Assembly (NCBI RefSeq): GCF_006345805.1
Contig: NC_043018.1
Span: forward strand, 16,554,001 to 16,618,000
DNA from: Octopus sinensis
Lineage: Eukaryota
DNA length: 64,000 nt
Direction of reading: 5' to 3'
This document shows positions 10,068-50,915 of this stretch, in pieces. Under the pieces are notes generated by a model. It was not told the origin of the DNA and made no database searches. It was given only the letters and a program-made list of their open reading frames with translations. A program made the translations under genes and the position numbers. How positions within the stretch are numbered: the stretch's first letter is position 1; each line of letters begins with the position of its first letter.

Positions 10068-10269
10068 TCAATAATTTAGTAATTTTACAAGGAAAACGAG
10101 AATAGGGATTATACTTTGGCGTATACTGTTATGAGTGCCACGGGTGATATTTATAGGAATGCACCTGCATTTCTTTACTTCTATATCGCATTGACATTTC
10201 ATATCTGGGCAGCAATACCTGGTTGGCATAATGCGGAGACAAACTGTCTTTGAGCAGGAGGAGGACAAC
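10068..10269 (-). CDS. Gene A terminal exon 3b (8-Cys domain plus hydrophobic tail)
   Basis: Acceptor tattctgtatttacag; intact frame LSSSCSKTVC...CC...C.C...CRC...LLNY*. Confidence 0.88.
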
Positions 10270-12001
10270 CTGTAAATACAGAATATTGTAGTGAAGTAAT
10301 AAACTCATTAAATTATGGTTTCTCGTCAGGGAAGAAGCTGTTGCATTTTATTGACTTCGATAAATTGATAATCTTACAAGGAAAACGAGAATAGCGATTG
10401 CACTTTGGAGTATAGTGTTATGAGTGCCATGCGTGTTATTTTGTGAATGACACCTGCAACCCGATGTACCCAAAAGCATATACATTTCATACCTGGGCAG
10501 CAGGAAATGGCTGACATATATTTTTGACATATACTCGTTGTGCAAGCGTACCTGTAAATACAGAATATTGTAGTGAAATAAGAAACTCATTAAATTATGG
10601 TTTCTCGTTAGGGAAGAAGTTGTTGCATTTTATTGATGTCGAAAAAATCCAACGGGATGTGAATGTACATCATGCAGAACCGAAACAAATAGGACGGGTC
10701 ATATTTTTCCGTTCTTTCAAAAATTGTCATTTGTACTTTCTCCAGTATTTTTTAAAAAAACCAAGTCTATGAATATATATTTTCCGAATTTCATAAGTAG
10801 ATAAGTAGATGTAGACAGTGATATGGTAATTCTTTTCTACTCTTGGCACAAGGCCCGAAATTTTGGGAGAGTGGGGCAAGTCGAATAGATCGACCCCAGT
10901 AAACGACTGGTACATAATTTATCGACCCCGAAAGGATGAAAGGCAAAGTCGACCTCGGCGGAATTTGAACTCAGAACGTAGAGACAGACGAGATTTTCTC
11001 GTCTGCAATTGGGAAATCAAACCTGCATTTCTTTTGCTACGGTCATTGTGGTTTGTCCTATGTACTTCTCTACGCATCCTAAATAAGATGTGAAAACGAC
11101 GTTTACAAAAGAAGAGACAAAACAATCCTCCATCTTGAAACTAATTTTGAAATGGGAATCTTAACCTTTATATGCTTTTCAAATCTGGTTACTTTGGTAT
11201 ATTTGTCTCTGTATCAAATAAAAGGAAAGAAAGAAAGAGAAACCGGCTTTCTTGCCTCGTTGCTTCATTGTCATTTATTAAGGATGGATATTAATGTCTG
11301 TCTCTAAGTAAATGCTTAAGTTCTTGAAGCTGTATAGCATGTCACATTTGTGTATATAGTTTTGGCTAAATTAGCCTGCAAGAAAATAGTAATATGAATA
11401 TGAAGATCAACTTCTCTAGCGGTATCGCCCAGCGTTTCTCGGCTTTGTTTCGACCCTTTAGAATTAGAATTTTTGAAGAGTAATAATTTTGCATTATGTA
11501 GTTTCTTATTTTCTTTAAGAGAACATTTTTCTGGTTGAAACACACGGAAAAATGGCGACACAGCAATCAGAAAATCGTAAAAAGTAGGGGTTTTCATAGA
11601 AAAAAAAGCACCTTCGTGATGTAAATAATTTTTGGTTTTAATATGACCTGATTTGAATTTCTTCTCCTACCTTAAGGAAGAGCAAGCCTTCTTCTATCAT
11701 ACTCTTAATTTTGGTCAACTTACGCCGCAGGGTCTCAGAGGAGAGAGTGTAAGTTGAAGGCTACAAAACCTGCCACACACAGACAACTTCAGCTTTGTAT
11801 ATAGAGATAGATTAGTTCGAAAGGTGAAGGTGGAGTGGGTGCGAGGTGGAGTAAGACTGAGTAGAAGAGAGAGAAGGAGAAGTCAAGAAAAAGAGAAGAA
11901 GAAGTAGAGAGAAGTGATTAATATTAATATACTTAAGCCAAATGCGTTGTCTGGTGAGCTGAAGCGTGAGGCGATGAACGAGAGAAAAAGAGAATTCGAG
12001 G

Positions 12002-12046
<45 letters not shown>

Positions 12047-14134
12047 CGGCTGCTGTGATGGTAGTGGTAGTGGTGGAGGTGTGTTGACAGTGAAAATTAT
12101 CTATTTTTATGAACTAATTTTTTTTCTCATAGTGACCATTGCTTATCGTATAAGTGTAGTTATTTATTATATGCTCGCTTAAAATTTGATATTTGTTTAT
12201 AAAGGCCAACTCTGGATTCACAGGAAATACAGTTACAAGCTGCTCGAAAAAGAATGAGCAGACATGGAGCACGGATCAGAGGGGGAAAAGGTAAAAATAA
12301 TGCAGTCGATGACGTGAGGAAATGGATGCAGACAAACGTCAAAAATAATTAAAGAATACTTCTTTCTCTCTTAAACAGGTCCTCTATACGTTTCCCATTC
12401 CGTGGAATTTCGACGGGTCCCAATAACAGATATAGATAATAGAATTCCATTCAGTTTTCCTCTACCATATTCATTCAGCTGGTATTGGTCGCTGGTCGCG
12501 CTGGGCGTATAGCAGAAGACACATGTTCAGGGAATGAACGCTCGCACTTGTTAACTAGGCAGTCATGCTTGCACCTATGGCTGAATGAATTGTTGATGAA
12601 TTTTCTAGGCAAAATAGAAACGAATATTATTCAGTTTTTACTCTTTATTCTTTTGCTTGTTTCAGTCATTTGACTGTGGCCATGCTGGAGCACCGCCTTT
12701 AGTCAAGCAAATTTATTCTTTGTAAGCCTAGTACTTAATCTATTGGTCTCTTTTGACGAACCTATAAGTTGTAGAGACGTAAACACACAAGCAACGGTTG
12801 TCAAGCGATATTGGGAGGGGTGGGACAAGCACAGACACACAAACATATACACACACCTACATATATAAATACATATATACGACGAGCTTCTTTCAGTTTC
12901 CGACTACCAAATCCACTCACAAGGCTTTGGTCGGCCGAAGCTATAGTAGGAGACACTTGCCCATGTTGTCATACAGTGGGACTGAACCCGGAACCATGTG
13001 TTTGGTAAGCAAGCTCCTTACCACACAGCCACTCCTACGCCTATATTACTCGTGAAAATTTTCTCCTATCGTCTCACTTGATATATTCCCGTTTCATATT
13101 CACTTTTACGCCGAAACTACAATCAGGAATGAGTCTCAAGAAAGGAACTGCGCCAATATTGATGACCGCTCTACTATAGACACATGCCATGAAACCTTAC
13201 TAGAAGGCGCTTGTCTATTAAATCGATAACATATGTAGATATGTAGATCTTACCCTTTAGTCGTATTACTAAAACTTACAGAAGCTCCTCTCTTTTGACG
13301 GACGGAAGCGACATCTGAAAGAAATACTAAAATACATATGGAAGCATTAGAAGTCTATTTACCAAAGTTTCGTGTAGAAATACACAAAATACCCATGAAG
13401 CACTCAACAGGTAATTCATTGAATGGAGGATAACGTATTTATGGTAAGACGATCTGAAACAAGATGCAGGATCATGAAGACTGGAACTCGAAGTTCCTCA
13501 CTCCTACACTTAAATATGGCTCATCACTGTAGTGATGGATGTGTTTAATACATAAAAGGAGATAAAAAAAACCAAAGGAGCAATAAAAAGGAATGACAAA
13601 AAAAAATACACGTGAAACATTATATTTATAGCACTTGCTGAATCTCTTTTGTAATTATTTTAATAATTAAGAATTCTAAGGGAGGCGGCGGTGGAGAGCT
13701 GGCAGAATGGTTAGCTGGACGAGCAAGGTGCTTAGTGTCCTTTCGTTCGTGTTTACGTTCTGAATCAAATACAGGAGTAAGAGATGAGAGCACACCACTA
13801 GAATCCTTCCCGATTTGTATCAGTTATGTTGTTAATTAAATGTTATATATTATATAGAAGAATCTTAATTCCGTATACTTGGTCTATGCGTAGTTTTGAT
13901 AAATAGAGTTATTTATTTAAAAGCTGTAATTGCATATAAATTGGGTACACCCGGAACACCGTTAAGGTAACTTTATTCATTTTCCTCCTTCCCGCCCTTC
14001 TATTTTCCGCCTTTTTCCCTACTACATTTCGGATTGCTATAAAATAAAAGAAATTTCTAATTATACTTACCTTGTTTATCCGAGAAGGTGTATGAAATGA
14101 ATACACAAAACAATAGGACGCTGGTACCTTTCAT
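10068..14134 (-). CDS. Secreted 8-Cys knottin-like (agatoxin-framework) peptide precursor, gene A, 108 aa; exons complement(14071..14134, 13254..13314, 10068..10269)
   Basis: Spliced ORF MKGTSVLLFCVFISYTFSDKQ-DVASVRQKRGASVSFSNTTKG-LSSSCSKTVCLRIMPTRYCCPDMKCQCDIEVKKCRCIPINITRGTHNSIRQSIIPILVFLVKLLNY*. Donors G|gtaagt and GG|gtaaga, acceptors tttcag and tttacag; phases 1 and 2 fit. Signal peptide, RQKR site, 8 Cys, hydrophobic C-terminus. Every exon has a paralog in gene B. Confidence 0.85.
10348..10551 (-). pseudogene. Gene A tandem-duplicated alternative exon 3a (8-Cys domain) with apparent 1-nt deletion
   Basis: Same acceptor tattctgtatttacag, 282 bp upstream of exon 3b. Phase-2 frame YACTTSICQKYMSAISCCPGMKCIC, then 17 nt (not 18) before CRC; the tail HSQNNTHGTHNTILQSAIAILVFLVRLSIYRSQ* is in another frame. 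Confidence 0.75.
10820..10995 (-). mobile_element. tRNA-derived SINE family 3, partial
   Basis: ttctgagttcaaattccgccgaggtcgactttgcctttcatcctttcggggtcgataaatt on minus strand. Confidence 0.75.
12645..13042 (-). mobile_element. tRNA-derived SINE family 1 (head ggcgcaggagtggctgtgtggtaag)
   Basis: A-box/B-box-like head, internal (TA/TG) tract, tail cagtcaaatgactgaaacaagtaaaaga. Confidence 0.8.
13254..13314 (-). CDS. Gene A coding exon 2 (propeptide with RQKR furin-type site)
   Basis: 61 nt, phase 1 to phase 2; acceptor tttctttcag, donor gtaaga; paralog at 24047-24107. Confidence 0.8.
14071..14134 (-). CDS. Gene A coding exon 1 (signal peptide MKGTSVLLFCVFISYTFSDKQ)
   Basis: ATG at 14134, preceded by acceptor cag|gtgcgtg (exon starts 14141); donor gtaagt at 14070; 4 nt differences from gene B exon 1. 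Confidence 0.85.
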
Positions 14135-19885: not shown

Positions 19886-21174
19886 GACGACTCTCTTTTA
19901 GCTTCCTTACACCGAATGCTCTCACAAGGGTTGGTTTAGGCATCCCAAGGCTGTAGTTCACAACATTTATCCACTGTATCACACACTGGGACTGAGCCCG
20001 GAACCACGTGGACGCTAAAAGATTTTTTACCACACAGGAACATTTCCTTATCCTCCACTTCTTCATACCTGTCATCCCAGAAATATTCGTCTCTAGCATC
20101 CAGTATTTCAGAAATGCCAAATTGTTTCAATGACGTGTCAGTAATGTCAGACATTATGTTTCCCAATGAAGCAACGACCATTTCAAAGACGAGAAGCGTC
20201 CGTGCATCTTTCTTTCTTGTACATTTTCCCAAGTCATTCAACTTGCCTTTTCATTGTCGTTTACTGACACTAATATTTAATGCTTGAAAAACATTTGTTA
20301 TTCTGTCGATAATTTACAGCTCTGTCAGTGTGTGTTATCGAATGTTATCAATAACAATATTCCATTCTTTACTAAAGTGCTATAAACCGATCCCATACGA
20401 AGAAATAGTTTACTTTTTGTAGTCCATCAGACTGTAAAGTGCAAGCACTTATCCATTTGCGACATTTATTTTTATCCATGAATCTTTGAGCGTGCATGGA
20501 TGACATTTCGCCCACAAGGCCCGAGGCTATAGTAGAAGACACCTGCCCAAGTACATCAGAACTTAAGACAGTACTGAGATAATCCTAGTTTTCTTGGATC
20601 CAGTGGTTTTCATCACAGTTTCTTTTTCCTCTTCAATTTTTTTTACTTCTTTTTCTGCTTTGGTTTAGATTCTGATTCTCTACCATGTGAAAACGAAAAG
20701 GAATTTTATTTATGTTCCCATGAAATAAAAAAAGTTATAGTCTGTCTTCCACCGATTTCTGATTAAATACTGATGATTAAATACTGTAATATATCATGAT
20801 TCTGATCAGCAGGCATCATTTGTGAGATCTTAGTTCTCAGCCGAAGTAATCAGTCATAAATTCCATCCATCATGCAGTATTTCTTTGAAATTCTGTGTAA
20901 GATATATTGAAAAGAGATGTTACAACACGACTTTGCTTCTTCAGATATCTGTAACCTAATTTCCTGAGGAAAACTCTAATCTCACTACTCGAAACGCAGA
21001 TGTTGCTCTAACAGTCAGTGATGTTCATTGACGTCACTGGGGATACAAATTTGATATTGTTTCAAATGATTTATTCTTGTTACTATTTTTTATTACTCTT
21101 CCACACAGGTGTTAACAATATTTAACCACATCGCATAATCATGTTCTTGATACATACATACATACATACATACA

Positions 21175-21210
<36 letters not shown>

Positions 21211-21217
21211 TTATATA

Positions 21218-21270
<53 letters not shown>

Positions 21271-21292
21271 GATGTATGTATATATGTATATA

Positions 21293-21329
<37 letters not shown>

Positions 21330-21331
21330 AC

Positions 21332-21405
<74 letters not shown>

Positions 21406-21884
21406 GGTGGAAACAGACGTTGAAAGAGTTCTCATGATACTCTCTATATAAATTCCAGCAACTAGTTTGAACTTTGCGCATGAGAAGTCTCCTGATATCT
21501 TTGTAGGAATATCGTTCGAATATTTACAAGTATGTAACATTTAAGTTATTCATTGTAGCTGTATGTAAATTGGTAATACCATCATATAGAGTGGTATGGT
21601 AATGATTGTTTTTTTTAGAGGTAGATTGGGTGTTTATAAGCTTCAGCTCTTTGTTGCCTGTGTACAGCCCAAGAACCTCAACCAGAGAAAGTACCCATAA
21701 CGATTTTCAAATTTTCGCTTCACAACTTATTGATTGTATTTGGAGAAATTGCATAAACGTACTCCGTACTTCTTGGATAATCCCCGGAGCTTCTAGATTT
21801 TGTTCTTTGGTTAATGCAAAATGGTTGTTAAGAAACAAAGGAAAATATTGTTGTTGGATATTAAGGCTTTATGTTTTATTCTTT

Positions 21885-22125
21885 TATCTGCTTCAGTCAT
21901 TTGACTGCGGCCATGCTGGAGCAACACCTTTAATCGAGAAAATCAAATCTCGGAACTTATTCTTTGTAAGCCTAGTATTTATTCTATAGGTTCGTCATGC
22001 CGAACGGCTAAGTGACGGGGACGTTAACAAACCAGCCTCGGTTGTGAAGCGATGTTGTGGGGTGGCAAACACAGGCATACAAGCATATACATACACACAC
22101 GCTCACACAAATACACATACAATGC
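21885..22125 (-). mobile_element. SINE family 1, 3' half
   Basis: cagtcatttgactgcggccatgctggagca... matches family tail. Confidence 0.7.
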
Positions 22126-22858
22126 ATAAAATTCTTCTGGTATGAGTTGTATACCTGGTGTACTTATTCTTCGATTTTTTGCCTAGTTCTTCCTTGCCGA
22201 GATTGATAGCAGAAATCCTTAATGCATAAAAGAAACAGTGAGGCCATTAATTCAAACAGAAAGTGTTCTATTTGCAAAGACGTCGATAGCATAATTTTCT
22301 GTGTGAGAATCATAAGATGCGTTTAGCCACAAACAACTATGCTTATTCAGTATACTATTTACCAGTGCAACATGTTAATTAATAGACAGTGAAATGTGTA
22401 GAAAACATTGATTTTGGTTATAGAAAATTGTGAGAATACATTTGACTACGTACATTTCACCTACAGCAAGCCGCCAACTGCAAATTGACAAGCCTTACAT
22501 AATTGTTTGAGACAGAAATAAAAATAATATAGCTGTAGAAGCCAGATAAACTTGAAGTAAGAGTATTTCATTCACTGTTAACAATATGGAGAATATTGTT
22601 ATGGAGACGGACAAATGCGTTGAAGACATCATCTTTACCAAAATATTTATTCACATTAGTAGTTTTGGTGCAATTAAATTATCCATATTACTAATTATTG
22701 AAATAATAAAGTTTCGATTTTCAGTGAAATAAATTTGAATAGCTAAAAAAGGTAATTGTTACTTAAATTTCAACCGTAGACCTTTGCTTCTTTGTCAGAA
22801 AAAAGTTTCCGTTTTTCATGAACTCTCGTCGTTATATTTCTCTGTCTGCAGGTTCGTG

Positions 22859-22922
22859 ATGAAAGGCATCAGTCTCCTATTGTTTTGTGTATTCATTTCA
22901 TACACCTTCTCGGATAAACAAG
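22859..22922 (+). CDS. Gene B coding exon 1 (signal peptide)
   Basis: Acceptor tctgcag at 22851, ATG 22859, donor gtaagt 22923. Confidence 0.85.
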
Positions 22923-24601
22923 GTAAGTATAATTTTAAATTTCTCTTATTTTATAGTCATCAGAAATGTAGTGGGATAAAAAGCGGTAATAGAAAGGCGG
23001 AAAATAGAATAACGTTACCACAGCGGTCCTTCGGATGTACATCATTTATATGTAGTTACAGCTTTTAAATTGTTGTTTTCCCTTCTCGAGCCGCGCCTGG
23101 CTCATTAGGGCCTGTTTCCCGGTTTCCTTGGTGTCCCCCACCTGGACGGGACGCCGGTCCGTCGCAGGTGAGCTGCAAGATGCAGGAGGAAAGAGTGAGA
23201 GAAAGTTGTGGCGAAAGAGTCAGCAGAAGTTCGCCATTACCTTCTGCCGAAGCCGCGTGGAGTTTAGGTGTTTCGCTCATAAACACATACATCACCCGGT
23301 CCGAGATTCGAACCCGCGATTCCTCGACCGCGAGTACGCTGCTCTAACCACTAGGCCATATGCCTACACGCTGCTCTAACCACTAGGCCATATGCCTACA
23401 AGCTGCTCTAACCACTAGGCCATGTGTCTCCACACAGCTTTTAAATAAATAACTCTATTTATCTACACTACGCATAGTCATACGGAATTGCACTTCTTCT
23501 ATATAATGTATAACATCTAATTAACAATATAATTAAATAATCTTTTATAATACAAATCCGGAAGAATTCAAGTCGTGTAATCCGATTTGTTACTCCTATA
23601 TCAGAGCAGAGCGGGCGAAATGCCGCTGAGAATATTGTCTATCGAGCTAGCGATTCTGCCAGTTCGCCGCTGCTTTTGCGATTCTTAACTATTAAAATAA
23701 TTACAGAGATTCAGCAAGTGCTGTATATATAATGTTTCACGTGTCTTTAGTTTGTCTTCTTGTCATTGCTTGTTATTATTCCTTTGGGTTTTTTTTTATC
23801 TCCTTTTATGTATTAAAAACATCCATCACTACAGTGATGAGCCATATTTAAGTGTAGGAGTGAGGAACTTCGAGTTCCAGTCTTCATGATCTTGCATCTT
23901 GTTTCAGATCGTCTTACCATAAATACGTTCTCCTCTATTCAATGAATTACCTGTTGAGTGCTTCAGGGGTATTTAGTGTATTTCTACACGAAACTTTGGT
24001 AAATAGACTTCTAATGCTTCCATATGTATTTTAATATTTCTTTCAGATGTCGCTCCCGTCCATCAACAGACAGGAGATTATGTAAGTTTGAGTAATATGA
24101 CTTACAGGTAAGAACTACATATCTACATTTCTTATAAATGTAAATAATTTAGTATTGGCAATGCGGGAAATTGGCATAATCGTTAGCACTCTGGATAAAA
24201 TACCTAAAGGCATTTCTTCCGGCTTTATGTCTTGAGTTGAAATTTTGCCGATGTTGACTGCACCTTTCAAAGTTACTGGGTTGATGAAATATATACTAGT
24301 TGAGAAATAGGGTCTAGACAACAGAGCAGCACACTCCATCAACGTTTCAGGCCTTGTGAGTATAATAGGAAATTTATTAGTATTGACAAATTCATATTCT
24401 GCATAAAAGAATATCTGAAAGAGGGAGATATGAGGCGAGACGTATCAAAGAGAAAATTATTTTTCACGAGTCAAAATCAAATATTTTTTTTAATATTATC
24501 CCTACAAAATCAATTAACAAATTTATTGAAACCGTGACTATGGCTGTGTAGTTAAGAGATCCACTTCCTAACCACAAAGTTTGCAGATTCAATACCTGAG
24601 C

Positions 24602-24676
<75 letters not shown>

Positions 24677-24758
24677 GATAGATAATAAGATAGATAGATA
24701 GATAGATAGATAGATGATAGATAGATAGATAGATAGATAGACCGACAGACAGATAGAT

Positions 24759-24818
<60 letters not shown>

Positions 24819-24841
24819 TGGATAGATAGATAGATAGATAG

Positions 24842-24880
<39 letters not shown>

Positions 24881-24892
24881 GCAGATATAGAC

Positions 24893-24939
<47 letters not shown>

Positions 24940-26042
24940 GATAGATAGATAGATAGATAGATATATATATAGAGAGAGATAGAAAATGTGAACTGATATT
25001 TTCATATTTAATGGATCTCTTGTATTCAACTCTACATCGCCGTCGTTGATGTTCAGGTTTTACATGGATTGTAAAAGGATAAGGCAATGGCTGCCGCTGT
25101 AGTTTACATCATATAATCCATGCGATGAAGAACGGCATAATCCAGGCTGTAGTCTCTATCCTGACCTCCCTTTCAATATTATATTGACATTCAATTCGTG
25201 TCGTGAGTATGAAGAACATACATTTTTCCTCAGATGGTTGACAAGCATCTGAGAAATCTGGCGGTTCACGAGGATACAGCAGCAAATCTATTCAGCTTTA
25301 GCTGTCACTGTCTACAGTTTCGATTGAGATTCTGGCTATACAGCAACCCCTCGACTATCGCGGGTGTTACGTTCCAAAATATCCCGCGTTAAGTGTAAAT
25401 CCGTGAATTAGAATCTATATTGTACATATTTTTTATTATTTTTAGGATTTGTACATATTTATTTTACTATAAATGCAAAACAACATCACGGAGGTACCGA
25501 CGTAAGCTTAAAGAATAAACCGCGATAAGTGAATCGCGATATGGCGAGGTATTACTGTATATTTATATACTTAGTTGCTAAGAAATTCGGGATAATACAG
25601 TCATTAATCGTTAAAAGAAGGGAAAAATATGACTTGTGGTATTTGTTTCGGTTCTGCATGTCGTGAGTTCAAGTCTCCTTAGATTCTTTAGATCTATTGA
25701 TCTCGATAAAATAAACACCAGTATCGTCTAATCCCTTCGCTAAATATTCCTTGACTTCTCCCTTAATTAGAAACCATAATTTAATAATGTCTTTTATCTC
25801 CAACTATATTCTGTATTTACAGTAAGAGGGTTAAGAGAATGAATCCTAAATGTAACGAAATGTTCTGTGACGGTAGCGGACGTCCAACACGCTACCCCTG
25901 TTGCCCGGGTTTGAGATGTGTATGTAGAACATTACTTGGTTGCAGGTGTAGTTCACAAAATACGATCCATGTGGCTCATAGCGTTATACTCCAAACTGCA
26001 ATCGCTTTTCGGATTTTCATTGTAAATTTACCATCTTATTGA
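22859..26042 (+). CDS. Secreted 8-Cys knottin-like peptide precursor, gene B, 114 aa; exons 22859..22922, 24047..24107, 25823..26042
   Basis: Spliced ORF MKGISLLLFCVFISYTFSDKQ-DVAPVHQQTGDYVSLSNMTYS-KRVKR-MNPKCNEMFCDGSGRPTRYPCCPGLRCVCRTLLGCRCSSQNTIHVAHSVILQTAIAFRIFIVNLPSY*. 64+61+220=345 nt; canonical splice sites; RVKR site directly before the Cys domain. Confidence 0.87.
23065..23432 (-). mobile_element. tRNA-derived SINE family 2, diverged copy with triplicated 5' end
   Basis: Homologous to 26836-27222; 32-bp head unit repeated three times. Confidence 0.7.
24047..24107 (+). CDS. Gene B coding exon 2 (propeptide)
   Basis: Acceptor tttctttcag, donor AG|gtaaga; 61 nt as in gene A. Confidence 0.8.
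24601..24985. repeat. (GATA)n/(GACA)n microsatellite in gene B intron 2
   Basis: Direct reading. Confidence 0.95.
25341..25557. mobile_element. pogo/Tigger-like MITE in gene B intron 2
   Basis: TA|cagcaacccctcg...cgaggtattactg|TA terminal inverted repeats with TA flanks and internal cgcg motifs. Confidence 0.7.
25823..26042 (+). CDS. Gene B terminal exon 3 (KRVKR, 8-Cys domain, hydrophobic tail)
   Basis: Acceptor tattctgtatttacag identical to the gene A exon-3 acceptors; open to TGA at 26042. Confidence 0.88.
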
Positions 26043-26420
26043 CATTCTGCTCTGGTGAATCTTGTGGATAAATGTTATACGTGAGATTGTTTTTATCCAA
26101 GGTGGAATTCGATGAGAAGAAATGCAGACAAACAAAGCAAAGGAGCCGGTTAAGCAGCAAAAGTACACACAACTACAACAAGAACATCAACACGTGTTGT
26201 TACTGATAATACTGCTGTATTTCTCTACGTACTCCTACTCCTCCTCTTTCATCATTTCATCCTGATCCTCTCCGCTTCCTCCTCCAAATCTTTGCCGGCG
26301 TCCTCTACTCCCAGTTCTTCCCCCTCATCCTCATCCTCATCTTCCTCCTTCTACTACTGCTACTTTTTTCAATTTCGAAATTTAACCAGTCGTCAAATTC
26401 TCTGACAGTAGAAAACTATG

Positions 26421-26681
26421 AATAAACATCAAGAGACATAGTGAATATAAAAATATCAACGAGCAGAAGTTTGATTTTGTAGTTTGTCCTGGAAAGAAAT
26501 TCACGTATGTTGCACCAACAACTGAAATGGTAAAAGAAGAGAAAATCTGCAAACCATAACTTAAAACTGTGACTTTTCTTACAAACCGAAATTAATACGA
26601 CGAATGTATTTAATATCTAATATATTTTTGCTATTATTCCTTCAAATTTTAAAGAAATCTCACTTAAATAAATTTATTAAA
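26421..26681 (+). promoter_or_regulatory. Candidate polyadenylation signals of gene B (AATAAA 26421, AATAAA 26667, ATTAAA 26676)
   Basis: Hexamers lie in a 3' region conserved with gene A, whose minus-strand equivalents are AATAAA at 9932-9937 and ATTAAA at 9720-9725. Confidence 0.4.
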
Positions 26682-26835
26682 GCATTTCAAATACTTAGTG
26701 ATTCGATTTTCGCTGTGCTGCTTTTTTAAATGTTATTGAACGGTAACAAAATCTCAGTGCTTCGTTCTTCGCTGTGGTATTTGCCTTTAAGTTATCGATA
26801 TGAACGGTAAGAATTTACATTGCAGTGGTATGCTA

Positions 26836-27222
26836 TGGAAGCACTCCGTCGGTTACGACGATGAGGGTTCCGGTTGATCCGAATCAACGGAACAGCCTGT
26901 TCGTGAAATTAGCGTGTAAGTGGCTGAGCACTCCACAGACACGTGTACCCTTAACGTAGTTCTCGGGGATATTCAGCGTGACACAGAGAGTGACAAGGCC
27001 GGCCCTTCGAAATACAGCTACAACAGAAACAGGAAGTAGGAGTGAGAGAAAGTTGTGGTGAAAGAGTACAGCAGGGATCACCACCATACCCCTGCCGGAG
27101 CCTCGTGGAGCTTTTAGGTGTTTTCGCTCAATAAACACTCACAACGCCCGGTCTGGGAATCGAAACCGCGATCCTATGACCGCGAGTCCGCTGCCCTAAC
27201 CACTGGGCCATTGCGCCTCCAC
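26836..27222 (-). mobile_element. tRNA-derived SINE family 2 (head tggaggcgcaatggcccagtggttagggcagcggactcgcgg)
   Basis: A-box TGGCCCAGTGG, B-box-like GGTTTCGATTCCC; tail gacggagtgcttcca. Confidence 0.85.
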
Positions 27223-27229
27223 AGTGGTA

Positions 27230-27770
27230 TGCTCTATTATTGTAAAAAAAAAAAGAATATCCTCCGAGTTCTATTTTTATAACATTTAAATACAGATGAA
27301 TAGGAAATACTGATATAAGTAGAGAAGCGAGAGCAGAGAAAGAAGGGTGTAGTAAAGATAGAGGACAATGGGCAATACACCTCACAACAAAAACTGTTTA
27401 GCCGCGGCGATGACCGTATGGCCAGCGCTACTTGCTGCAGCAACCACGCCCGTTTCAAGGGCTTATTCATGCAATAGGCTGCCTTCGTCCTAATCTTGGC
27501 TTTGAACTCGGTATTACAAAATCCGAAAACTCCTGAGGTCTCTACTGTAACCCACACAATCTGACAGGGGCTACTGAGTTCACTGTATTTATTGATTTTT
27601 TCTCTCCTCGTGATTATGGCCGGCGTAAATCGGATTCGTAGCCGTTGCAGCAAGTTTGGCTCCTTCTAAAATACCATTTTGCTCAGCTTGCAACAGATGC
27701 CGCCGGATCGCCACGAAAGAATAATAAAACAAAGAAACTGATACAAGTTACATTAATCATTGGCAACATG
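27230..27770 (-). mobile_element. CRE-clade non-LTR retrotransposon 3' remnant (RLE domain)
   Basis: TRREKINKYSEL...VTVETSGVFG...WLLQQVALAIR, matching the RLE tail pattern REEKK.KY..L...ETxG..G...L.QR.S.A.QRGN. Confidence 0.6.
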
Positions 27771-28446: not shown

Positions 28447-28757
28447 ATGGAAGCACTCCGTCGGTTACGACGACGAAGGTTCCGGTTGATCCGAATCAAC
28501 GGAACAGCCTGCTCGTGAAATTAACGTGTAAGTGGCTGAGCACTCCACAGACACGTGTACCCTTAACGTAGTTCTCGGGGATATTCAGCGTGACACAGAG
28601 AGTGACAAGGCCGGCCCTTTGAAATACAGGTACAACAGAAACAGGAAGTAAGAGTGAGAGAAAGTTGTGGTGAAAGAGTACAGCAGGGATCACCACCATC
28701 CCCTGCTGGGGCATCGTGGAGCTTTAGGTGTTTTCGCTCAATAAACACTCACAACGT
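28447..28757 (-). mobile_element. SINE family 2, 5'-truncated
   Basis: Matches family body and tail. Confidence 0.8.
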
Positions 28758-30858: not shown

Positions 30859-32487
30859 CAGTTGCGGTCAAAATGTTCAGAACGGCATTGTTTTCGTCAG
30901 AAAAGTAGATATAATTTTTTTATCAAAGTTGTTTTATATTCTATAATTTTCACAGACAATAAATACGATATTATTTGTTATTGCCTGAGATTTTGGTGCA
31001 ATTTGAGAGGATAATACAAAAGTTATGGATGATTTAGTGATTTACTGCAAAACCCATGGCGGCCAAAATGATCAGAACGGTTGCTTTTACTCCGTGTTTT
31101 AGTATATTTAACCGGCGAACTCTAATGTTTTGAATTTGTTTACGTGACGGTTCGTTTACTAAACATTAGTAAGAATATTTGCAGTGTACTTTGTTAATAT
31201 AATGCCACTTACTCCGTTACCAATTCGTCAGCAGATTATTAAGCTTCGAAGGAAGGATAATTTAAGTATTGGATCTATTGCAAAGATTGTTAACAAGTCA
31301 AAAAGTGTTGTACACGGTATTCTTAAGGTCTACGATGATTGTGGTTCGTGTGAAGCAAGAAAGTTTACAGGTAGGCCAAGAAAAAACGACCAAGAGAGAA
31401 GATCGTGCTATGGTAAAGTTGGTTAAAAAGGACAGATTTAAAACTGCTGCTGCTGTTTCTCGGAAAATGAGCATTGTATTGAAGAAAACTTTATCTCGAA
31501 AAACTGTCTCGTCGTTTAGTTGAACATGACCTACAAGCAAGAGCACCTGCAGTGAAGCCACTGATCAGCTCCAAGAATAAAAAGTGTCGTCTTACCTTTG
31601 CAACCGAACATGTGTTGTGGTCTCAAGAAAAATGGCAAACGGTGCATTTCAGTGATGAATCTAAGTTTATGCTATTTGGCTCAGATGGGAAAAGGTACGT
31701 TTATCGAAAAGTAGGTGAAAAATTGTCGCCTAAATGCCTTAAGACTAGTGTTAAATTCGGTGGAGGAAGTGTCATGGTTTGGGGGATGATATCTGGAGAT
31801 GGTGCGGGCCCTTTGGTGCGATTACATGAAAAGGTAAATGCAGGAGTTTATAAACAACTTGTAAAAGATCATGTCTTGCCTGTGCTGAGAAATTCAACTA
31901 TGCGACCACCCATATTCATGCAGGACAATGCCCCATGTCACAAGGCTAAGGTGGTCATGAACTTCCTCAAGGCTGAAAAGGTTATTGTTATGGATTGGCC
32001 TGCTCAAAGCCCAGATCTCAAGCCTATTGAAAATGTGTGGAATATTCTAGGAGAACGTTCGAAAGCCAGAAATCCTAAAACAACTGAGCAATTATGGAAT
32101 GCCCTTCTGGAAGAATGGAATAAGATCACCCAGCAAGAAATTGAAAATTTAATTTCCTCATGCAGTCGAAGATGTCAGAGTGTGATTGAAGCTAAAGGGC
32201 TTCACACTAAATATTAAATAATTCCAGTATTTTCTGTCATGTTTGATTATTTTGTTATTTTTTCAACCGTTCTGATAATTTTGGCCGCCATGTGTTTTGC
32301 AGAAAATCACTAAATAATCCATAAAGTTTGTATTATCCTCTCAAATTACACCAAAATCTCAGACAATAACAATTAATATTGTATTTATTGTCTGTAAAAA
32401 TTATAGAATATAAAACTACTTTGATAAAAACTTATACCTACTTTTCTGACGAAAACAATGCCGTTCTGAACATTTTGGCCGCAACTG
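30859..32487 (+). mobile_element. Full-length Tc1-family (DD34E) transposon, 1629 bp, with ~220 bp IR/DR terminal repeats
   Basis: TA|cagttgcggtcaaaatgttcagaacgg...ccgttctgaacattttggccgcaactg|TA; inner repeat ggccaaaatgatcagaacgg. Confidence 0.95.
31202..32217 (+). pseudogene. Tc1 transposase with two frameshifts
   Basis: MPLTPLPIRQQII...TGRPRK / TTKREDR...SRKTVS / KPLIS...FSDESKF...FMQDNAPCH...WPAQSPDLKPIENVW; 34 residues between the second D and E. Confidence 0.9.
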
Positions 32488-33262: not shown

Positions 33263-36200
33263 ATGGTGGTGGTGGTGGTGGTGGTGGGTTGGTGATGGTG
33301 ATGGTGGTGGTGGTGATGGTGGTGGTGGTGGTGGTGGTTGGTGGTTGATGGTGGTGGTGATGGTGGTGGTGGGGTGGTGGTGATGTGGTGTGGTGGTGGT
33401 GGGTGTGATGGTGGTGATGGGGTGGGTGGTGGTGGTGGTGTGGTGATGGTGGTGGTGGTGGTGGTGGTGATGGGTGTGATGGTGGTGGTGGTGGTGTGGG
33501 TGGTGGTGGGTGTGGTGGTGGTGGTGATGGTGGTGGTGATGGTGGTGGTGGTGGTGGTGGTGATGGTGGTGGTGGTGGTTGTGATGGTGGTGATGGTGGT
33601 GGTGGTGGTGGTGGTGGTGGTGGTGGGTGGTGGTGGTGGTGTGGTGGTGAGGTGGTGGTGTGGTTGGTGGTGGTGGTGGTTGGGTGGTGTGATGGGTGGT
33701 GGTGGTGTGGTGGTGGTGGTGATGGTGGTGGTGATGGTGGTGGTGGTGGTGGTGGTGATGGTGGTGGTGGTGGTTTTGATGGGTTGGTGGTGTGTGGTGG
33801 TGGTGGTGGTGGTGGGGGGGTGGTGGTGGTGGTGATGGTGGTGGTGGGTGGTGGTTGGTGGTGGTGGTGATGGTGGTGGTGGGTGGTGGTGGTGTGGTGA
33901 TGGTGTGGTGGTGGTGGTGATGTGTGGTTGGTGGTGGTGGTGGTGGTGGTGGTGATGGTGGTGGTGGTGGTGGTGATGGTGTGGTGGTGGTGGTGGTGAT
34001 GGTGGTGAGGTGGTGGTGGTGGTGGTGATGGTGGTGGTGGTGGTGTGTGATGGGGTGGTGGGTGGTGGTTGAGGATGGTGGTGGTGGTGGTGAGGTGGTG
34101 TGGTGGTGGTGGTGGTGGTGGTGGTGGTGGTGGTGGTGATGGTGGTGGTGGTGGTGATGGTTGGTGGTGGTGGTGGGTGGTGGTGGTTGATGGTGTGTGG
34201 GTGGTGATGGTGGTGATGGTGGTGGGTGGTGGTGAGGTGGTGGTGGTGGTGATGGTTGGTGGTGGTGGTGGTGGTGTTGTGATGGTTGTGGTGGTGATGG
34301 TGGTGATGGTGTGGTGGTGTGTTTTGGTGGTGGTTGGTGGGTGTGGTGGTGGTGGTGATGGTGGTGGTGGTGGTGTGTGAGGTGGTGGTGGTGGTGTGGT
34401 GGTGTGGTGGTGGTGGGGGTGGTGGTGGTGATGGTGGTGGTGAGGTTGGGTGGTGTGGTGGTGGTGATGGTATGGTGGTGGTGGTTTGATGGTGGTGGTG
34501 GTGGTGGTGGTGGTGGTGTGATGGTGGTGGTGGGGTTGGTGATGGTGGTGTGGTGGTGGTGGTGGTGTGGTGGTGGTGGTGGTTGGTGGTTGATGGTGGT
34601 GGTGGTGGTGGTGTGGGTGGATGGTGGTGGTGGTGGTTTTGATGGTGGTGATGGTGGTGGTGGTGGTGGTGGTGGTGATGGTGGTGGTGGTGGTTGTTGG
34701 GTGGTGGTGGTGGTGGTGGTGATGGTGGTGGTGATGGTGGTGGTGATGGTGGTGGTGGGGGGGTGGGTGGTGGTTGGTGGTGGTGGTGGTGTGGTGATGG
34801 TGTTGGTGGTGGTGGTGGTGATGGTGGTGGTGGTGGGTGGTGATGGTTGTGGTTGGGTGATGGTGGTGATGGTGGTGGTGGTGTGGTTGATGGTTGTGGT
34901 GGTGGTGGTGGTGATGGTGGTGGTGGTGGTGTGGTGGTGGTGGGGTGGTTGATGGTGTGATGGTGGTTGGTGGTGGTGATGGTTGGTGGTGGTGATGGTG
35001 GTGGTGATGGTGGTGGTGGTGGTGATGGTGTTGGTGATGGTGGTGGTGTGGTGGTGGTGATGGTGGTGGTGATGGGTGGTGGTGGTGGTGATGGTGGTGG
35101 TGAGGTGGTGGTGGGTGGTGATGGGGATGGTGGTGGTGTGGTTGGTGGTGGATGGTGGTGGTGATGGTGTGGTGGTGGTGGTGGTGATGGTGGTGGTGAT
35201 GGTGGTGGGGGTGGTGATGGTGGGTTGGTGATGGTGGTGGTGGTGGTGGTGGTGGTGGTGGTGATGGTGGTGGTGGTGGTGATGGTGGGTGGTGGTGATG
35301 GTGGTGGTGGTGGTGGTGGTGGTGGTGATGGTGTGGTGGTGGTGATGGTGTGGTGGTGGTGGTGTGGTGATGGGTGGTGGTGGTTGTGGTGGTGATGGTG
35401 GTGGGGTGGTGGTGGTGTGGTGGTGGTGGTGGTGGTGGTGGTTGATGGTGGTGGTGATGGTGGTGGTGGTGGTGGTGGTGATGGTGGGTGGTGGTGTTGA
35501 TGGTTGGTGGTGGTGGGTGATGGTGGTGATGGTGTGGTGGTTGGGTGGGGTGGTTGTGGTGGTGATGGTGGTGATGGTTGGTGGTGTGGATGGTTGGTGG
35601 TGGTGATGGTGGTGATTGGGGTGGAGTGATGGTGGTGGTGGGTTGGTGTGGGTGGTGGTGGTGGTGAGGTAGTGGTGGTGGTGGTGATGGTGGTGGTGTG
35701 GTGGTGAGGGTGGTGGTGGTGTGTGTGGTGGTGGTGGTGGTGGTTGTGGTGGTGATGGTGGTGGTGGTGGGTGGTGATGGTGGTGGTGGGTGGTGATGGT
35801 GATGGTGGTGTGGTGGTGATGGTGTGTGGTTGATGGGGTGGTGGTGGTGGAGTGATGGTGATGGTGGTGGTTGGTGGTGATGTGGTGGTGATGGTGGTGG
35901 TGGTGGTGGTGGTGGTGATGGTGGTGGTGGGGTGTGATGGTTGTGGTGGTGATGGTGGTGATGGGTGGTGATGGTGGTGGTGGATGTGTGGTGGGTGTTG
36001 GTGGTGGTGGTGGTGATGGTGGGTGGTGGTGGTGATGGTGGTGGGGGTGGTGTGGTGATGGTGGTGATGGTGGTGGTGGTGGTGATGGTGGTGGCGGTGG
36101 TGGTGGTGGTGATGGTGGTGTATGGTGGTGTGGTGATGGTGGTGGTGATGGTGGTTGTGGTGGTGGTGATGGTGGGTGTGGTGATGGGGTGGTGGGTGGT

Positions 36201-39200
36201 GGTGGTGGTGATGGTGGTGTTGGTGGTGGTGAGGGTGGTCGCTGGTGGTGGTGATGTGGGTGGTGGTGGTGGTGGGTTTGTGAAAGTGGTGGTGTGATGG
36301 GGTGTGGGTGGTGTGATGGTGGTGGGGTGGTGGTGGTGGTGTGATGGTGGTGATGGTGGTGGTGATGGTGGTGGTGGTGGTGGTGGTGGTGATGGTGTGG
36401 TTGGTGGTGGTTGGTGGTGATGGTGGTGGTGGTGGTGGTGGTGGTGGTGGTTGGTGATGGTGGTGTGGAGGTGGTTGATGGTGGTGGTGATGGTGGTGTG
36501 GTGGTGGTGGTGGTGGTGATGGTGGTGTGGAGAGGTGGTGATGGTGGTGGTGGGTGGTGGTGGTGGTGATGGTGATGGTGATGGTGTGGTGGTGGTTTGG
36601 TGGTGGTGGTGGTGATGGTGGTGTGGATGGTGGTGAGGGGTGGTGATGGTGGTGTGGTGGTGGTGAGGGTGGTGGTGGGTGGTGAGTGGTGTGATGGGTG
36701 GTGGTGGTGGTGGTGGTGGTTGATGGTGGTGGTGGTGGTGGTGATGGTTGGTGGTGGTGGTTGGTGGTGGTGGGTGGTTGGTGGTGGTGGTGATGGTTTG
36801 GTGGTGGTGGTTGGTGGTGGTGGTGGTGATGGTGGTGTGGTGGTGGTGGTGGTGTTGTGTGGTGGTGGTGATGGTGGTGTGGGTTGGTGGTGGTGGTGTG
36901 GTGTGCTGGTGGTGTGGTGGTGGTTGGTGGTGGTGGTGATGGTTGGTGTGGATGGTGGGATGATGGTGGGTGGTGATGGGTGATGGTGGTGGTGGTGGTG
37001 ATTGGCTGGTGGTGATTGGTGATGGTGGTGGTGGTGATGGTGGTGGTGATGGTGGTTGTGGTGGTGGTGATGGTGGTGGTGATGTGGTGTGGTGGTTGTG
37101 GTGGTGGTTGATGGTGTGGTGGTGGGGGTGGTGATGGTGATGGGTGGTGGTTGGTGGTGGTGGTGGTGATGGTGGTGTGTGTGTGGTGGTGGTGATGGTG
37201 GGTGGTGATGGTGGTGGTGTGGGGATGGTGGTGGTGGTGGTGATGGGGGTGATGGTGATGGTGGTGGTGGTTTGATGGTGGTGTGTGGTGGTGTGGTGGT
37301 GGTTGGTGATGGTGGTGGTTGGTGGTGTTGGTGGGGGGTGTGGTGGTGATGGTGGGGTGGTGGTGGTGGTGGTGGGGTGATGGTGGTGTGTGGTGTGTGA
37401 TGGTGGTGGTGATGGTGGGAGGGGTGGTGGTGTTGGTGATGGGGTGTGGTGGTGGTGATGGTGGTCGTGGTGGTGGTGGTGGGTGGTGGTGATGGTGGTG
37501 GGAAGGTGGTTGGTGGTGGCGGTGATGGTGGTGGTGATGGTGGTGGTGGTGGTGGTGGGGTGGTGATGTGGTGGTGGTGGTGGTGATGGTGGTGGGGTGG
37601 TGATGGTGGTGGTGGTGGTGGTGGTGGTGATGGTGGTGTGGTGGTGGTGATGGTGGGTGGTGATGGTGGTGGTGGGTGATGGTGATGGTGGTGGTGGTGG
37701 TGGTGGTGGTGATGGTGATGGTGGTGGTGATGGTGGGGGGGTGATGGTGTGTGTGGTGTGGTGGTGATGGTAGGGTGGTGGTGATGGGTGGGGGTGATGG
37801 TGGTGGGGGTGGTGGGTGGTGGTGGTGGTGGTGGTGGTGGTGGTGGTTTTGTGGTGGTTGATGTGGTGGTGGTGATGGTGGTGTGATGATGTGATGGTGT
37901 GGTGCTGGTGTGGTGGTGGTGGGTGGTGGTGGTGGTGGTGTGATGGATGGTGGTGGTGGTGAGTGGTGGTGAGGTTGAGGTGGTGGTGTGGTGGTGGTTG
38001 GTGATGGTGGTGTGGGTGGTGGTGATGGTGGTGGTGATGGTGGGATGTGGGGGTGGTGGTGTGATGGTGTGGTGATGGTGGGTGGTGGTGGTGGGTGGTG
38101 ATGGTGGTGGTGGTGGTGGTGGGGTGGGGTGGTGGTGGTGTGATGGTGGTGGGGTGATGGTGGTGATGGTGATGTGGTGGTGGTGGGGGTGATGGTGGTG
38201 GTGATGGTGGGTGGGGGGTGGTGGTGGTGGGGTGGTGGTGGTTGTGATGGGGTGATGTTGGTGGTGGGGTGGTGGATGGTGGTGGTGATGGTGGTGGTGA
38301 TGGTGGTGGTGGTGGTGGTGGTGGATGGTGGTGTGGTGTTGGTGATGGTGGTATGGTGGTGGTGGGTGGTGGTGATGGTGGTGGTTGGTGGTGGGTGGTT
38401 GGTGATGGTGTGATGGTGGTGGTGATGGTGGTGGTGGTGGTGATGATGGTGGTGGTTTGGTGGTGGGGGTGGTGGTGGTGGTGGTGGTGATGGTGGTGGT
38501 GGGTGATTGGTGATGGTGGTGATGGTTGGTTGGGATGGTGGTGATGGTGGGGTGGCGGTTGGCTGGGGTGGTGGTGGTGGTGGTGGTGGTGATGGTGGTG
38601 GTGATGGTGGTGTGGTGATGATGATGGGGTGGTGGTGGTGGTGATGGTTGTGTGTGGTGGTGGTGGTGGGATGATGGTGGTGGTGGTGGTTGGTGGTTGG
38701 TGGTGGGTTGATGGTGGTGGTGATGGTGGTGGTGGTGGTGATGGTGGGTGTGGTGGTGGTGATGGTGGTGGTGATGGTGGTGGTGGTGGTGGTGGTGATG
38801 GTGGTGGTGGTGGTGGTGGTGTGGTGGTGGTGATGGTGGGGTTTGGTGGTGGTGGTGATGTGATGGTGATTGGTGGTGTGGTGGTGGTGATGGTGGTGGT
38901 GGTTGGTGGTGGTGGTGATGGTGGTGGTGGTGGTGATGGTGGTGTGGTGGTGGTGATGGTGGTGGTGATGGTGGTGGTGGGTGATGGTGATGGTGGTGGT
39001 GGTGGTGGTGGTGATGGTGGTGTGGATGGTGATGGTGGGTGGTGATGTTGGTGGTGATGGTGGTGGTGATGGTGGTGTGTGGTGGTGGTGGTGGTGGTGG
39101 TGGTGTGGTTGGTGGTGATGGTGGTGGGTGTGGTTGGTGGTTGGTGATGGTGGTGGTTGGTGGTGGTGATGGTTGGTGGTGGTGATGGTGTGGTGGTGGT

Positions 39201-50638: not shown

Positions 50639-50915
50639 TATATTTTAAAGTCCAACATGTTAAATGACTTGATGTCGCAGAATGTTAACGGAGTACAGCA
50701 ACAGTAATGGCGATGGCGAGAACGAGACATGGCGTCCGTATGGACATCAACAACTAGTTAGACTGAAAAAGGAAACAGGGATTTAGCATTATTTAGGACC
50801 GCTTGCGGCACCATGGCATTGGCACGTTTGACTTTCGGTTACAATGTTACAATACATTCACATGCTAATCTCTCTCACCCCCTCTCTCTCTCCCTCTCTC
50901 TTCTTTCCCGTATTA

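What the first reader, a model, noticed from the sequence alone, without database searches (positions are those of the whole stretch)
25930..26042. Conserved 30-aa post-knottin tail resembles a GPI signal: possible natural membrane-tethered toxin
Seen: after the last Cys all three exons have a small/polar spacer and a terminal hydrophobic stretch with no cytoplasmic tail (IPINITRGTHNSIRQSIIPILVFLVKLLNY, SSQNTIHVAHSVILQTAIAFRIFIVNLPSY, HSQNNTHGTHNTILQSAIAILVFLVRLSIYRSQ). Tail length is identical in the two intact genes, and N-glycosylation sequons occur (NIT, NNT, and NTT/NMT in exon 2). Established: GPI-anchored toxin-fold modulators exist for three-finger folds (lynx1/Ly6), and GPI-tethered knottins are used as engineered tools. 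Inference: an endogenous GPI-anchored knottin acting on channels or receptors in cis.
Basis: inference. Interest (0 to 1): 0.8.

Follow-up and report, generated by a model that had tools for sequence, protein, structure and literature searches.

The report
Octopus knottin genes with GPI-like tail
Two octopus genes here encode small toxin-like (knottin-type) peptides that end in a 30-residue greasy tail shaped like a signal for attaching a lipid membrane anchor, which would be a first for this fold; the tail shows no sign of being kept by selection, so its role needs a bench test.

Summary
The window holds two intact three-exon genes, head to head. Each encodes a signal peptide, a propeptide, an 8-Cys knottin-like core and a 30-aa hydrophobic tail.

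They belong to an uncharacterised, tandemly amplified family found only in Octopus (O. bimaculoides, O. vulgaris). All 17 intact cassettes carry a 28-35-aa tail.

By rule-based checks the tail looks like a GPI-attachment signal:
- There is an N-terminal signal peptide and no cytoplasmic residues.
- The apolar run is only 5-13 residues, too weak for a transmembrane helix.
- It is not amphipathic.
- Most copies have a small-residue triplet (Cys-Ser-Ser) 9-12 residues upstream.

"Conserved" is misleading, however. The tail diverges exactly as fast as the adjacent 3'UTR. Its dN/dS is 1 or more, third codon positions vary least, dead pseudo-exons keep the tail equally well, and the candidate omega site is not conserved. 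Both window genes carry Arg, Lys or Pro in the tail, and gene A has Cys-Ile-Pro at that site.

What stands out is the hypervariable core, 6-9 times more diverged than its flanks. That argues against a conserved modulator of the animal's own channels.

GPI anchoring is the best single reading (about 0.4) but remains unproven.

The parts
22859..22922 (+). Gene B exon 1 (CDS): signal peptide MKGISLLLFCVFISYTFSDKQ, donor G|GTAAGT, phase 1
24047..24107 (+). Gene B exon 2: propeptide DVAPVHQQTGDYVSLSNMTY with N-M-T sequon, phase 2
25823..25949 (+). Gene B exon 3, first part: SKRVKR dibasic site plus the 8-Cys knottin-like core (C-x4-C-x10-CC-x4-C-x-C-x6-C-x-C)
25950..26042 (+). Gene B 30-aa tail SSQNTIHVAHSVILQTAIAFRIFIVNLPSY plus TGA (the finding itself). 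Arg interrupts the hydrophobic stretch.
26043..26122 (+). First 80 nt of gene B's 3'UTR, as conserved across paralogs as the tail. AATAAA lies at 26421, beyond a low-complexity insertion.
25089..25187 (+). Relic pseudo-exon tail in B's intron 2 (GCRCSLHHIIHAMKNGIIQAVVSILTSLSILY*). Its core is replaced by a microsatellite. An orthologous relic lies in O. bimaculoides at L001 12408-12503.
14071..14134 (-). Gene A exon 1: signal peptide MKGTSVLLFCVFISYTFSDKQ
13254..13314 (-). Gene A exon 2: propeptide DVASVRQKRGASVSFSNTTK (RQKR site, N-T-T sequon)
10161..10269 (-). Gene A exon 3, core: LSSSCSKTVCLRIMPTRYCCPDMKCQCDIEVKKCRC
10068..10160 (-). Gene A 30-aa tail IPINITRGTHNSIRQSIIPILVFLVKLLNY plus TGA. 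C-I-P follows the last Cys. AATAAA at 9937.
10348..10551 (-). Tandem duplicate of gene A's exon 3, frameshifted between the CIC and GCRC parts. Its tail HSQNNTHGTHNTILQSAIAILVFLVRLSIYRSQ has lost the TGA (pseudo-exon).

Best explanation
Genes A and B belong to a young, tandemly amplified, Octopus-specific family of secretory-pathway peptide precursors.

Exon 1 encodes the ER signal peptide. Exon 2 encodes an N-glycosylated propeptide. The last exon encodes a dibasic cleavage site in most members, a hypervariable 8-Cys knottin-like head and a constant ~30-aa hydrophobic C-terminal extension.

The most likely fate of that extension (inferred, not shown) is to act as a GPI-attachment signal. After translocation the weakly hydrophobic C-terminus would be recognised by GPI transamidase. 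It would be cut at or just after the last Cys (C-S-S in most copies) and replaced by a GPI lipid. A furin-like convertase would then remove the propeptide. The result would be a ~35-residue knottin head tethered to the outer membrane leaflet, possibly released later by lipases or on vesicles.

The tail looks constant because it belongs to the slowly diverging flanks of a cassette whose core diversifies very fast. No purifying selection on the tail's residues is detectable. Some copies, including both window genes, may therefore carry weakened signals.
For: Shown:
- Intact 3-exon CDSs with a signal peptide.
- NCBI models of O. bimaculoides orthologues and paralogues use the same structure and include the tail.
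- All 17 intact cassettes in three genomes carry a tail of 28-35 aa, and 14 of them one of exactly 30 aa. Of these 17, 15 were checked at DNA level and 2 are known from protein models only.
- There is no stop and no dibasic site between the core and the tail.
- The hydrophobic segment is 14-24 aa by the windowed hydropathy criterion and ends 0-3 residues from the C-terminus in the intact copies scanned.
- The best 19-mer insertion energy is +2.5 to +8.8, against +1.2 to +7.3 for four human GPI signals and -2.9 for the glycophorin A TM. The longest apolar run is 5-13 residues. The hydrophobic moment is 0.11-0.38.
- Rule-conforming omega triplets C-S-S or C-N-S with a 5-12-residue spacer occur in 10 of the 11 intact copies scanned and in 3 of the 6 O. 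vulgaris copies.
- There are zero indels in the tail, against 1.8-2.5 gap columns per pair in the UTR.
- The core model has the knottin hairpin, and its best PDB matches are nearly all ICK peptides at TM 0.5-0.6.

From established knowledge:
- A signal peptide plus a terminal hydrophobic stretch without a cytosolic tail is the defining layout of metazoan GPI proteins.
- A disulfide-bonded Cys can be the omega residue, as in Thy-1.
Against: - No dedicated predictor or experiment was available.
- The omega+1/+2 residues are not conserved: SS, NS, IP, NP, RT. Gene A has Pro at omega+2.
- Gene B has Arg, and gene A has Lys and Pro, inside the hydrophobic stretch.
- Tail dN/dS is 1.1-4.4.
- Third codon positions are the least variable.
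- Tail divergence equals 3'UTR divergence in every pair, Fisher p 0.48-1.0.
- Retention of hydrophobicity and absence of stops are not significant against simulated neutral change, P(no stop) = 0.10.
- Dead pseudo-exons keep the tail just as well.
- An omega site abutting a compact disulfide knot leaves no flexible linker.
- A tail-less relative exists, LOC128250511.
Confidence: 0.4

Rival explanations
1. The tail is an uncleaved hydrophobic C-terminal anchor or propeptide. It would hold the precursor in the ER, Golgi or granule membrane for sorting or quality control until a protease releases the knottin head. This resembles the C-terminal extensions of mollusc antimicrobial peptide precursors or the C-terminal propeptides of plant class II defensins.
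For: - The omega triplet is not conserved.
- Dibasic sites before the core in most members show convertase processing typical of regulated secretion.
- The tail is predicted helical at low confidence.
- From my own knowledge, C-terminal extensions after Cys-rich domains are common in mollusc AMP precursors.
Against: - There is no basic or other recognisable cleavage site between the last Cys and the tail in any copy.
- The apolar run of 5-13 residues and the positive insertion energy make stable membrane integration unlikely.
- Known mollusc and plant C-terminal propeptides are acidic, not apolar.
Confidence: 0.2
2. The tail stays on a secreted peptide and acts as a lipophilic handle that partitions the knottin into target membranes. 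Known parallels are spider ICK toxins with hydrophobic C-terminal tails (omega-agatoxin IVA type) and two-domain ICK-plus-helix toxins.
For: - The weak best sequence matches are to 8-Cys spider toxins, including omega-agatoxin IVA/IVB, with the same CC-x4-CxC-x6-CxC spacing.
- The hypervariable core fits a toxin acting on external targets.
Against: - An uncharged 14-17-residue apolar segment with low hydrophobic moment should aggregate or be caught by ER quality control rather than be secreted.
- Known toxin tails are shorter or cationic and amphipathic.
- The matches to spider toxins have E about 1.
Confidence: 0.15
3. The tail has no function of its own. It is a tolerated read-through of constant flanking DNA in a young, rapidly turning-over gene family, with many copies drifting towards pseudogenes.
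For: - dN/dS is >=1, and codon-position variability is the reverse of what purifying selection gives.
- Tail divergence equals UTR divergence.
- The simulation shows no excess retention of hydrophobicity.
- Arg, Lys and Pro substitutions occur in the window copies.
- Pseudo-exons are frequent.
- One O. vulgaris copy has lost a core Cys.
Against: - All 17 intact cassettes keep an open tail of 28-35 aa, and the 13 compared at DNA level have no indels, while the UTR does have indels.
- A 15-residue apolar C-terminus on a secretory protein is not biologically neutral. Unprocessed GPI-like tails are normally retained and degraded, so premature stops should be favoured if the tail were useless.
Confidence: 0.15

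Closest known systems
Ly6/uPAR proteins (lynx1, CD59, Drosophila sleepless/quiver)
   Same: A small disulfide-rich toxin-type fold made with an N-terminal signal peptide and a C-terminal GPI signal. The omega site lies close to the last Cys. Some members modulate ion channels while tethered.
   Different: The fold and Cys framework are three-finger, not C-C-CC-CxC-CxC. These proteins are conserved, not hypervariable, and have no dibasic propeptide. Here GPI anchoring is only inferred.
8-Cys spider ICK toxins (omega-agatoxin IV, mu-agatoxin, purotoxin, delta-palutoxin types)
   Same: The Cys pattern is the same in the C-terminal half. The best, weak, sequence and fold matches are to this group. 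Some carry a hydrophobic C-terminal tail.
   Different: No significant homology (E about 1; Pfam Toxin_9 E 0.049, Toxin_7 9.2 bits against a cut-off of 27). Spider tails are short and remain on a soluble secreted toxin. The phylum is different, so convergence is likely.
Cone-snail conotoxin gene superfamilies
   Same: Three-exon layout of signal, propeptide and mature peptide. Constant signal and UTR with a hypervariable Cys-framework core, raised at both synonymous and nonsynonymous sites. Tandem amplification within a mollusc.
   Different: No sequence similarity was found. Conotoxin precursors have no 30-aa hydrophobic C-terminal extension. The tissue of expression here is unknown.
Engineered membrane-tethered toxins (t-toxins)
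   Same: A knottin or other toxin head fused to a GPI signal so that it acts on channels of the expressing cell. This is exactly the layout proposed here.
   Different: Those are artificial constructs using the lynx1 signal and linker. No natural animal example turned up in the literature searched.
C-terminal extensions of mollusc Cys-rich antimicrobial peptide precursors (myticin/mytilin type)
   Same: Mollusc precursors with a signal peptide, an 8-Cys mature peptide and a C-terminal extension of tens of residues. These families are polymorphic and fast-evolving.
   Different: Those extensions are acidic and are removed. Here the extension is apolar with no cleavage motif. This comparison rests on my own knowledge and was not tested.

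Membership tests
GPI-anchored protein (C-terminal GPI-attachment signal) | N-terminal ER signal peptide | tested here: met
   Exon 1 encodes MK + a 13-residue hydrophobic core + TFS in both genes, 79% identical across the family. Judged by inspection; SignalP was not available.
GPI-anchored protein (C-terminal GPI-attachment signal) | Moderately hydrophobic segment of about 10-20 residues at the extreme C-terminus, with no cytosolic tail, too weak for a TM helix | tested here: met
   Segments of 14-24 aa end 0-3 residues from the stop in the intact copies. The best 19-mer energy is +2.5 to +8.8, within the range of four GPI controls and unlike the glycophorin A TM at -2.9. Gene B is weakened by an internal Arg.
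GPI-anchored protein (C-terminal GPI-attachment signal) | Omega site: small residues at omega and omega+2, no Pro at omega+1/+2, followed by a polar spacer of about 5-10 residues | tested here: inconclusive
   C-S-S or C-N-S with a 5-12-residue spacer occurs in gene B and most copies. Gene A has C-I-P, and O. vulgaris copies have C-I-P, C-N-P and C-R-T. This was a rule-based scan only.
GPI-anchored protein (C-terminal GPI-attachment signal) | Positive call by a trained predictor (NetGPI, PredGPI, big-PI) | not testable with these tools
GPI-anchored protein (C-terminal GPI-attachment signal) | Release by PI-PLC, or dependence on GPI transamidase | not testable with these tools
   This needs an experiment.
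Inhibitor cystine knot (knottin) peptides | At least six Cys in a C-C-CC-C-C framework within about 30-40 residues | tested here: met
   C-x4-C-x8-10-CC-x4-C-x-C-x5-7-C-x-C, with the eight Cys invariant in 10 sequences.
Inhibitor cystine knot (knottin) peptides | Knottin fold: a beta-hairpin with knotted disulfides | tested here: inconclusive
   The AF2 core model has pLDDT 68 and a hairpin at E26-30/E34-38. The top Foldseek PDB hits are mostly ICK peptides at TM 0.5-0.6, but E is >=0.86. Disulfide connectivity cannot be tested here.
Inhibitor cystine knot (knottin) peptides | Significant match to a curated toxin or knottin family profile | tested here: not met
   Best Pfam matches are Toxin_9 at E 0.049 and Toxin_7 at 9.2 bits against a cut-off of 27. 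PDB sequence matches have E >=0.89.
Ly6/uPAR three-finger family | Three-finger Cys framework (8-10 Cys, C-terminal CCxxxxCN) | tested here: not met
   The Cys pattern is the ICK type, and no Ly6/UPAR Pfam hit was found. The similarity is functional analogy only.

The most novel reading that the evidence does not exclude
These genes would encode the first natural GPI-tethered knottins: a repertoire of hypervariable toxin-fold heads displayed on octopus cell surfaces. They could act as contact or recognition cues, for instance for the nicotinic-receptor-like chemotactile receptors of the suckers or for skin self-recognition, or as tethered channel ligands.
Probability: 0.25. Interest if true: 0.85.

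Novelty: new variant of a known kind. Interest (0 to 1): 0.55.

Why it matters
- Knottin peptides are known as soluble toxins, antimicrobials and hormone antagonists. Membrane-tethered versions exist only as engineered tools. A natural GPI-linked knottin family would show that evolution reached the same design.
- It would also give cephalopod biology a new class of surface molecules.
- Independently of the tail, this is an unannotated, Octopus-specific, tandemly amplified peptide family with conotoxin-like cassette hypervariability. Cephalopod venom and secretion studies have not described ICK peptides.
- The analysis also carries a caution. A constant segment next to a hypervariable one can look 'conserved' without being under selection.

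Tried and rejected
- RNA-level explanation for the joint conservation of the tail and 3'UTR. RNAalifold gave -6.7 kcal/mol with covariation about 0. The single-sequence z-score was 0.15. Rejected.
- Splice donor at TGCAG|GTGT inside exon 3 that would skip the tail. The GT is absent in the O. bimaculoides copies. Rejected.
- True transmembrane helix or amphipathic helix. Rejected on insertion energy, apolar run length and hydrophobic moment.
- Purifying selection on the tail. Tested by Nei-Gojobori dN/dS, codon-position variability, comparison with the UTR and intron, comparison with pseudo-exons, and a mutation simulation. No signal was found.
- Search for the tail on other protein types or in other taxa. 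The profile search of 1.84 billion representatives found only Octopus proteins. The profile of the C-terminal half found nothing at E<=10.
- Exact look-up of window ORFs or proteins in public assemblies. The source species of the window stays unidentified. It matches the O. bimaculoides and O. vulgaris loci retrieved at about 78-95% only.
- Literature searches for octopus knottins, GPI knottins, the LOC identifiers and the NLPSY motif. Nothing relevant turned up.
- Full-length AF2 model. pLDDT of 55 was too low to use beyond its secondary structure.

Full report
**What is there**

The window is AT-rich animal DNA full of microsatellites, SINE-like repeats and a Tc1/mariner element.
- Gene B tail: 25950-26039 on the + strand.
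- Gene A tail: 10160-10071 on the - strand.
- Third tail: 10449-10351 on the - strand.

The two strands carry an inverted duplication, with arms at about 16218-9139 and 21019-27671 and 67-84% identity. Aligning the arms shows two head-to-head three-exon genes with canonical splice sites. Spliced in silico they give intact proteins of 114 aa (B: 22859-22922, 24047-24107, 25823-26042) and 108 aa (A: 14134-14071, 13314-13254, 10269-10068).

Each protein has four parts:
- a signal peptide (exon 1);
- a propeptide with an N-x-T sequon (exon 2);
- a dibasic site (SKRVKR in B, RQKR in A) followed by an 8-Cys core, C-x4-C-x8-10-CC-x4-C-x-C-x5-7-C-x-C;
- a 30-residue tail ending at TGA.

The third tail belongs to a tandem duplicate of A's last exon (10551-10348). 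Its front and back halves lie in different frames and its TGA is lost, so it is a pseudo-exon. A fourth, relic tail lies in B's intron 2 (25089-25187). Its core has been replaced by a microsatellite.

**Relatives**

The word-index protein searches (two of the three gave hits) and one exhaustive profile search of 1.84 billion representatives found the family only in Octopus.
- O. bimaculoides: 'uncharacterized' LOC128250513, 514, 516 (two isoforms with different last exons), 517, 536 and 541. The four loci whose DNA could be retrieved lie within about 29.18-29.26 Mb of one chromosome.
- O. vulgaris: two mis-fused models.

LOC128250513 is the orthologue of gene B (75% identity). LOC128250516 X1 is the likely counterpart of gene A, judged by core similarity and by its head-to-head position next to 513, as in the window.

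The retrieved loci hold further unannotated last-exon cassettes. They also include a 76-kb O. vulgaris stretch with six tandem A-type units.

All 17 intact cassettes have a tail of 28-35 aa, and 14 of them have exactly 30. A more distant neighbour, LOC128250511, has the Cys core but a short polar, basic end instead.

No Pfam family is matched: Toxin_9 E 0.049, Toxin_7 9.2 bits against a cut-off of 27. PDB sequence matches to 8-Cys spider toxins have E about 1.

An AlphaFold model of the core has pLDDT 68 and shows the knottin hairpin. Its best structural neighbours are almost all ICK peptides at TM 0.5-0.6, but with E >=0.86. 'Knottin' is therefore well suggested but not proven.

**Is the tail conserved?**

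At the protein level the tail looks conserved. Mean pairwise identity among nine proteins is 79% for the signal, 33% for the propeptide, 36% for the core (16% without the Cys) and 50% for the tail.

At the DNA level the picture changes.

| Region | Measure | Value |
|---|---|---|
| Tail, 13 copies from three genomes | mean pairwise nt difference | 21.9% |
| First 80 nt of 3'UTR, same copies | mean pairwise nt difference | 19.5% |
| Tail vs adjacent UTR, 7 pairs | Fisher p | 0.48-1.0 |
| Tail codon positions 1 / 2 / 3 | mean pairwise nt difference | 0.232 / 0.260 / 0.165 |
| Tail | dN/dS (Nei-Gojobori) | 1.1-4.4 in every pair with a defined ratio |

The codon-position pattern is the reverse of what purifying selection gives.

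A simulation applied the observed number of random substitutions to the consensus tail. Neither the retained hydrophobicity (P 0.12-0.86) nor the absence of stop codons (P about 0.10) was unusual.

The tail of the dead relic exon differs between the window and O. bimaculoides at 8 of 31 residues. The live B tail differs from its orthologue at 8 of 30.

The only hint of constraint is the absence of indels. There are none in the tail, against 1.8-2.5 gap columns per pair in the UTR.

No conserved RNA structure explains the constant tail-plus-UTR block.

What is exceptional is the core. In recent paralog pairs it is 28-31% diverged, against 3.5-4.7% for tail plus UTR (p about 7e-9). This is conotoxin-like cassette hypervariability.

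**Does the tail look like a GPI signal?**

No GPI predictor was available, so I applied the classical rules.

Met:
- There is an N-terminal signal peptide.
- The hydrophobic segment is 14-24 aa and ends 0-3 residues from the C-terminus in the intact copies.
- There are no cytosolic basic residues.
- The longest run free of charged or strongly polar residues is 5-13 residues.
- The summed Hessa insertion energy of the best 19-mer is +2.5 to +8.8 kcal/mol.
- The hydrophobic moment is 0.11-0.38.

So the tail is neither a credible TM helix nor an amphipathic helix.

An acceptable omega triplet with the right spacing exists in most copies. It is the last Cys followed by S-S or N-S. From general knowledge, Thy-1 shows that a disulfide-bonded Cys can serve as the omega residue.

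These positions are not conserved, however. The O. vulgaris copies have I-P, S-S (three times), N-P and R-T. Gene A has I-P. Gene B has an Arg inside the hydrophobic stretch where its orthologue has Leu. Gene A also has Lys and Pro there.

**Interpretation**

The layout is a signal peptide plus a weakly hydrophobic extreme C-terminus, with no cleavage motif between core and tail. In metazoa this is what GPI proteins look like. Unprocessed tails of this kind are normally retained and degraded.

I therefore rank GPI anchoring first, at about 0.4. The rivals, in order, are:
- an uncleaved anchor or propeptide (0.2);
- a retained lipophilic handle on a secreted toxin (0.15);
- a functionless read-through in a fast-turnover family (0.15).

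The hypervariable head and the dibasic processing sites point instead to external targets or to recognition.

No literature on this family, or on natural GPI-anchored knottins in animals, was found.

**Verdict**

- This is a new variant of a known kind: an ICK-like peptide family with a GPI-signal-like C-terminal extension.
- Interest is moderate to high, pending a predictor run and a PI-PLC test.

Noticed in passing
window 33264-39739: A 6.5-kb imperfect (TGG)n array with about 2166 copies, 78% matches and GC skew near +1.
   Followed up: partly
window 30917-32430: A Tc1/mariner-like element with 167-nt terminal inverted repeats (93% complementary). Its transposase is split over two ORFs (31184-31426 and 31552-32217).
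   Followed up: no
window 24464-25087: A large microsatellite that reads as LSIY repeats when translated. It sits exactly where the Cys core of the relic exon in gene B's intron 2 should be.
   Followed up: partly
window 26835-27091, 28447-28756, 43514-43727, 50330-50640: Copies of a roughly 210-310-nt interspersed repeat at 96-98% identity, in both orientations. This looks like a young SINE-like family.
   Followed up: no
window about 26111-26356: About 250 nt of low-complexity sequence, with a CT-rich part, in gene B's 3'UTR that has no counterpart in gene A. It pushes the first AATAAA to 26421, against 131 nt after the stop in A.
   Followed up: partly
L005 (O. vulgaris OX597835.1, 7.56-7.64 Mb): Six or more tandem A-type gene units with a period of 9-13 kb are fused into one 250-aa annotated model (CAI9738802.1). 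That model reads one tail in the wrong frame. One unit has lost the second core Cys.
   Followed up: partly
L002 21902-22120, 22869-23087, 26883-27101: Three intact last-exon cassettes lie in a row downstream of one O. bimaculoides gene (LOC128250514). LOC128250516 has isoforms with different last exons. This suggests alternative use of terminal cassettes.
   Followed up: partly
P0011-P0013 (O. bimaculoides LOC128250511): A neighbouring, more distant relative has the same Cys core but a short polar, basic C-terminus instead of the hydrophobic tail.
   Followed up: partly
window 26043-26110 and the equivalent in all paralogs: The first 65 nt or so of the 3'UTR is at least as conserved as the coding tail across three genomes. 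No RNA structure was detected and the reason is unknown.
   Followed up: yes
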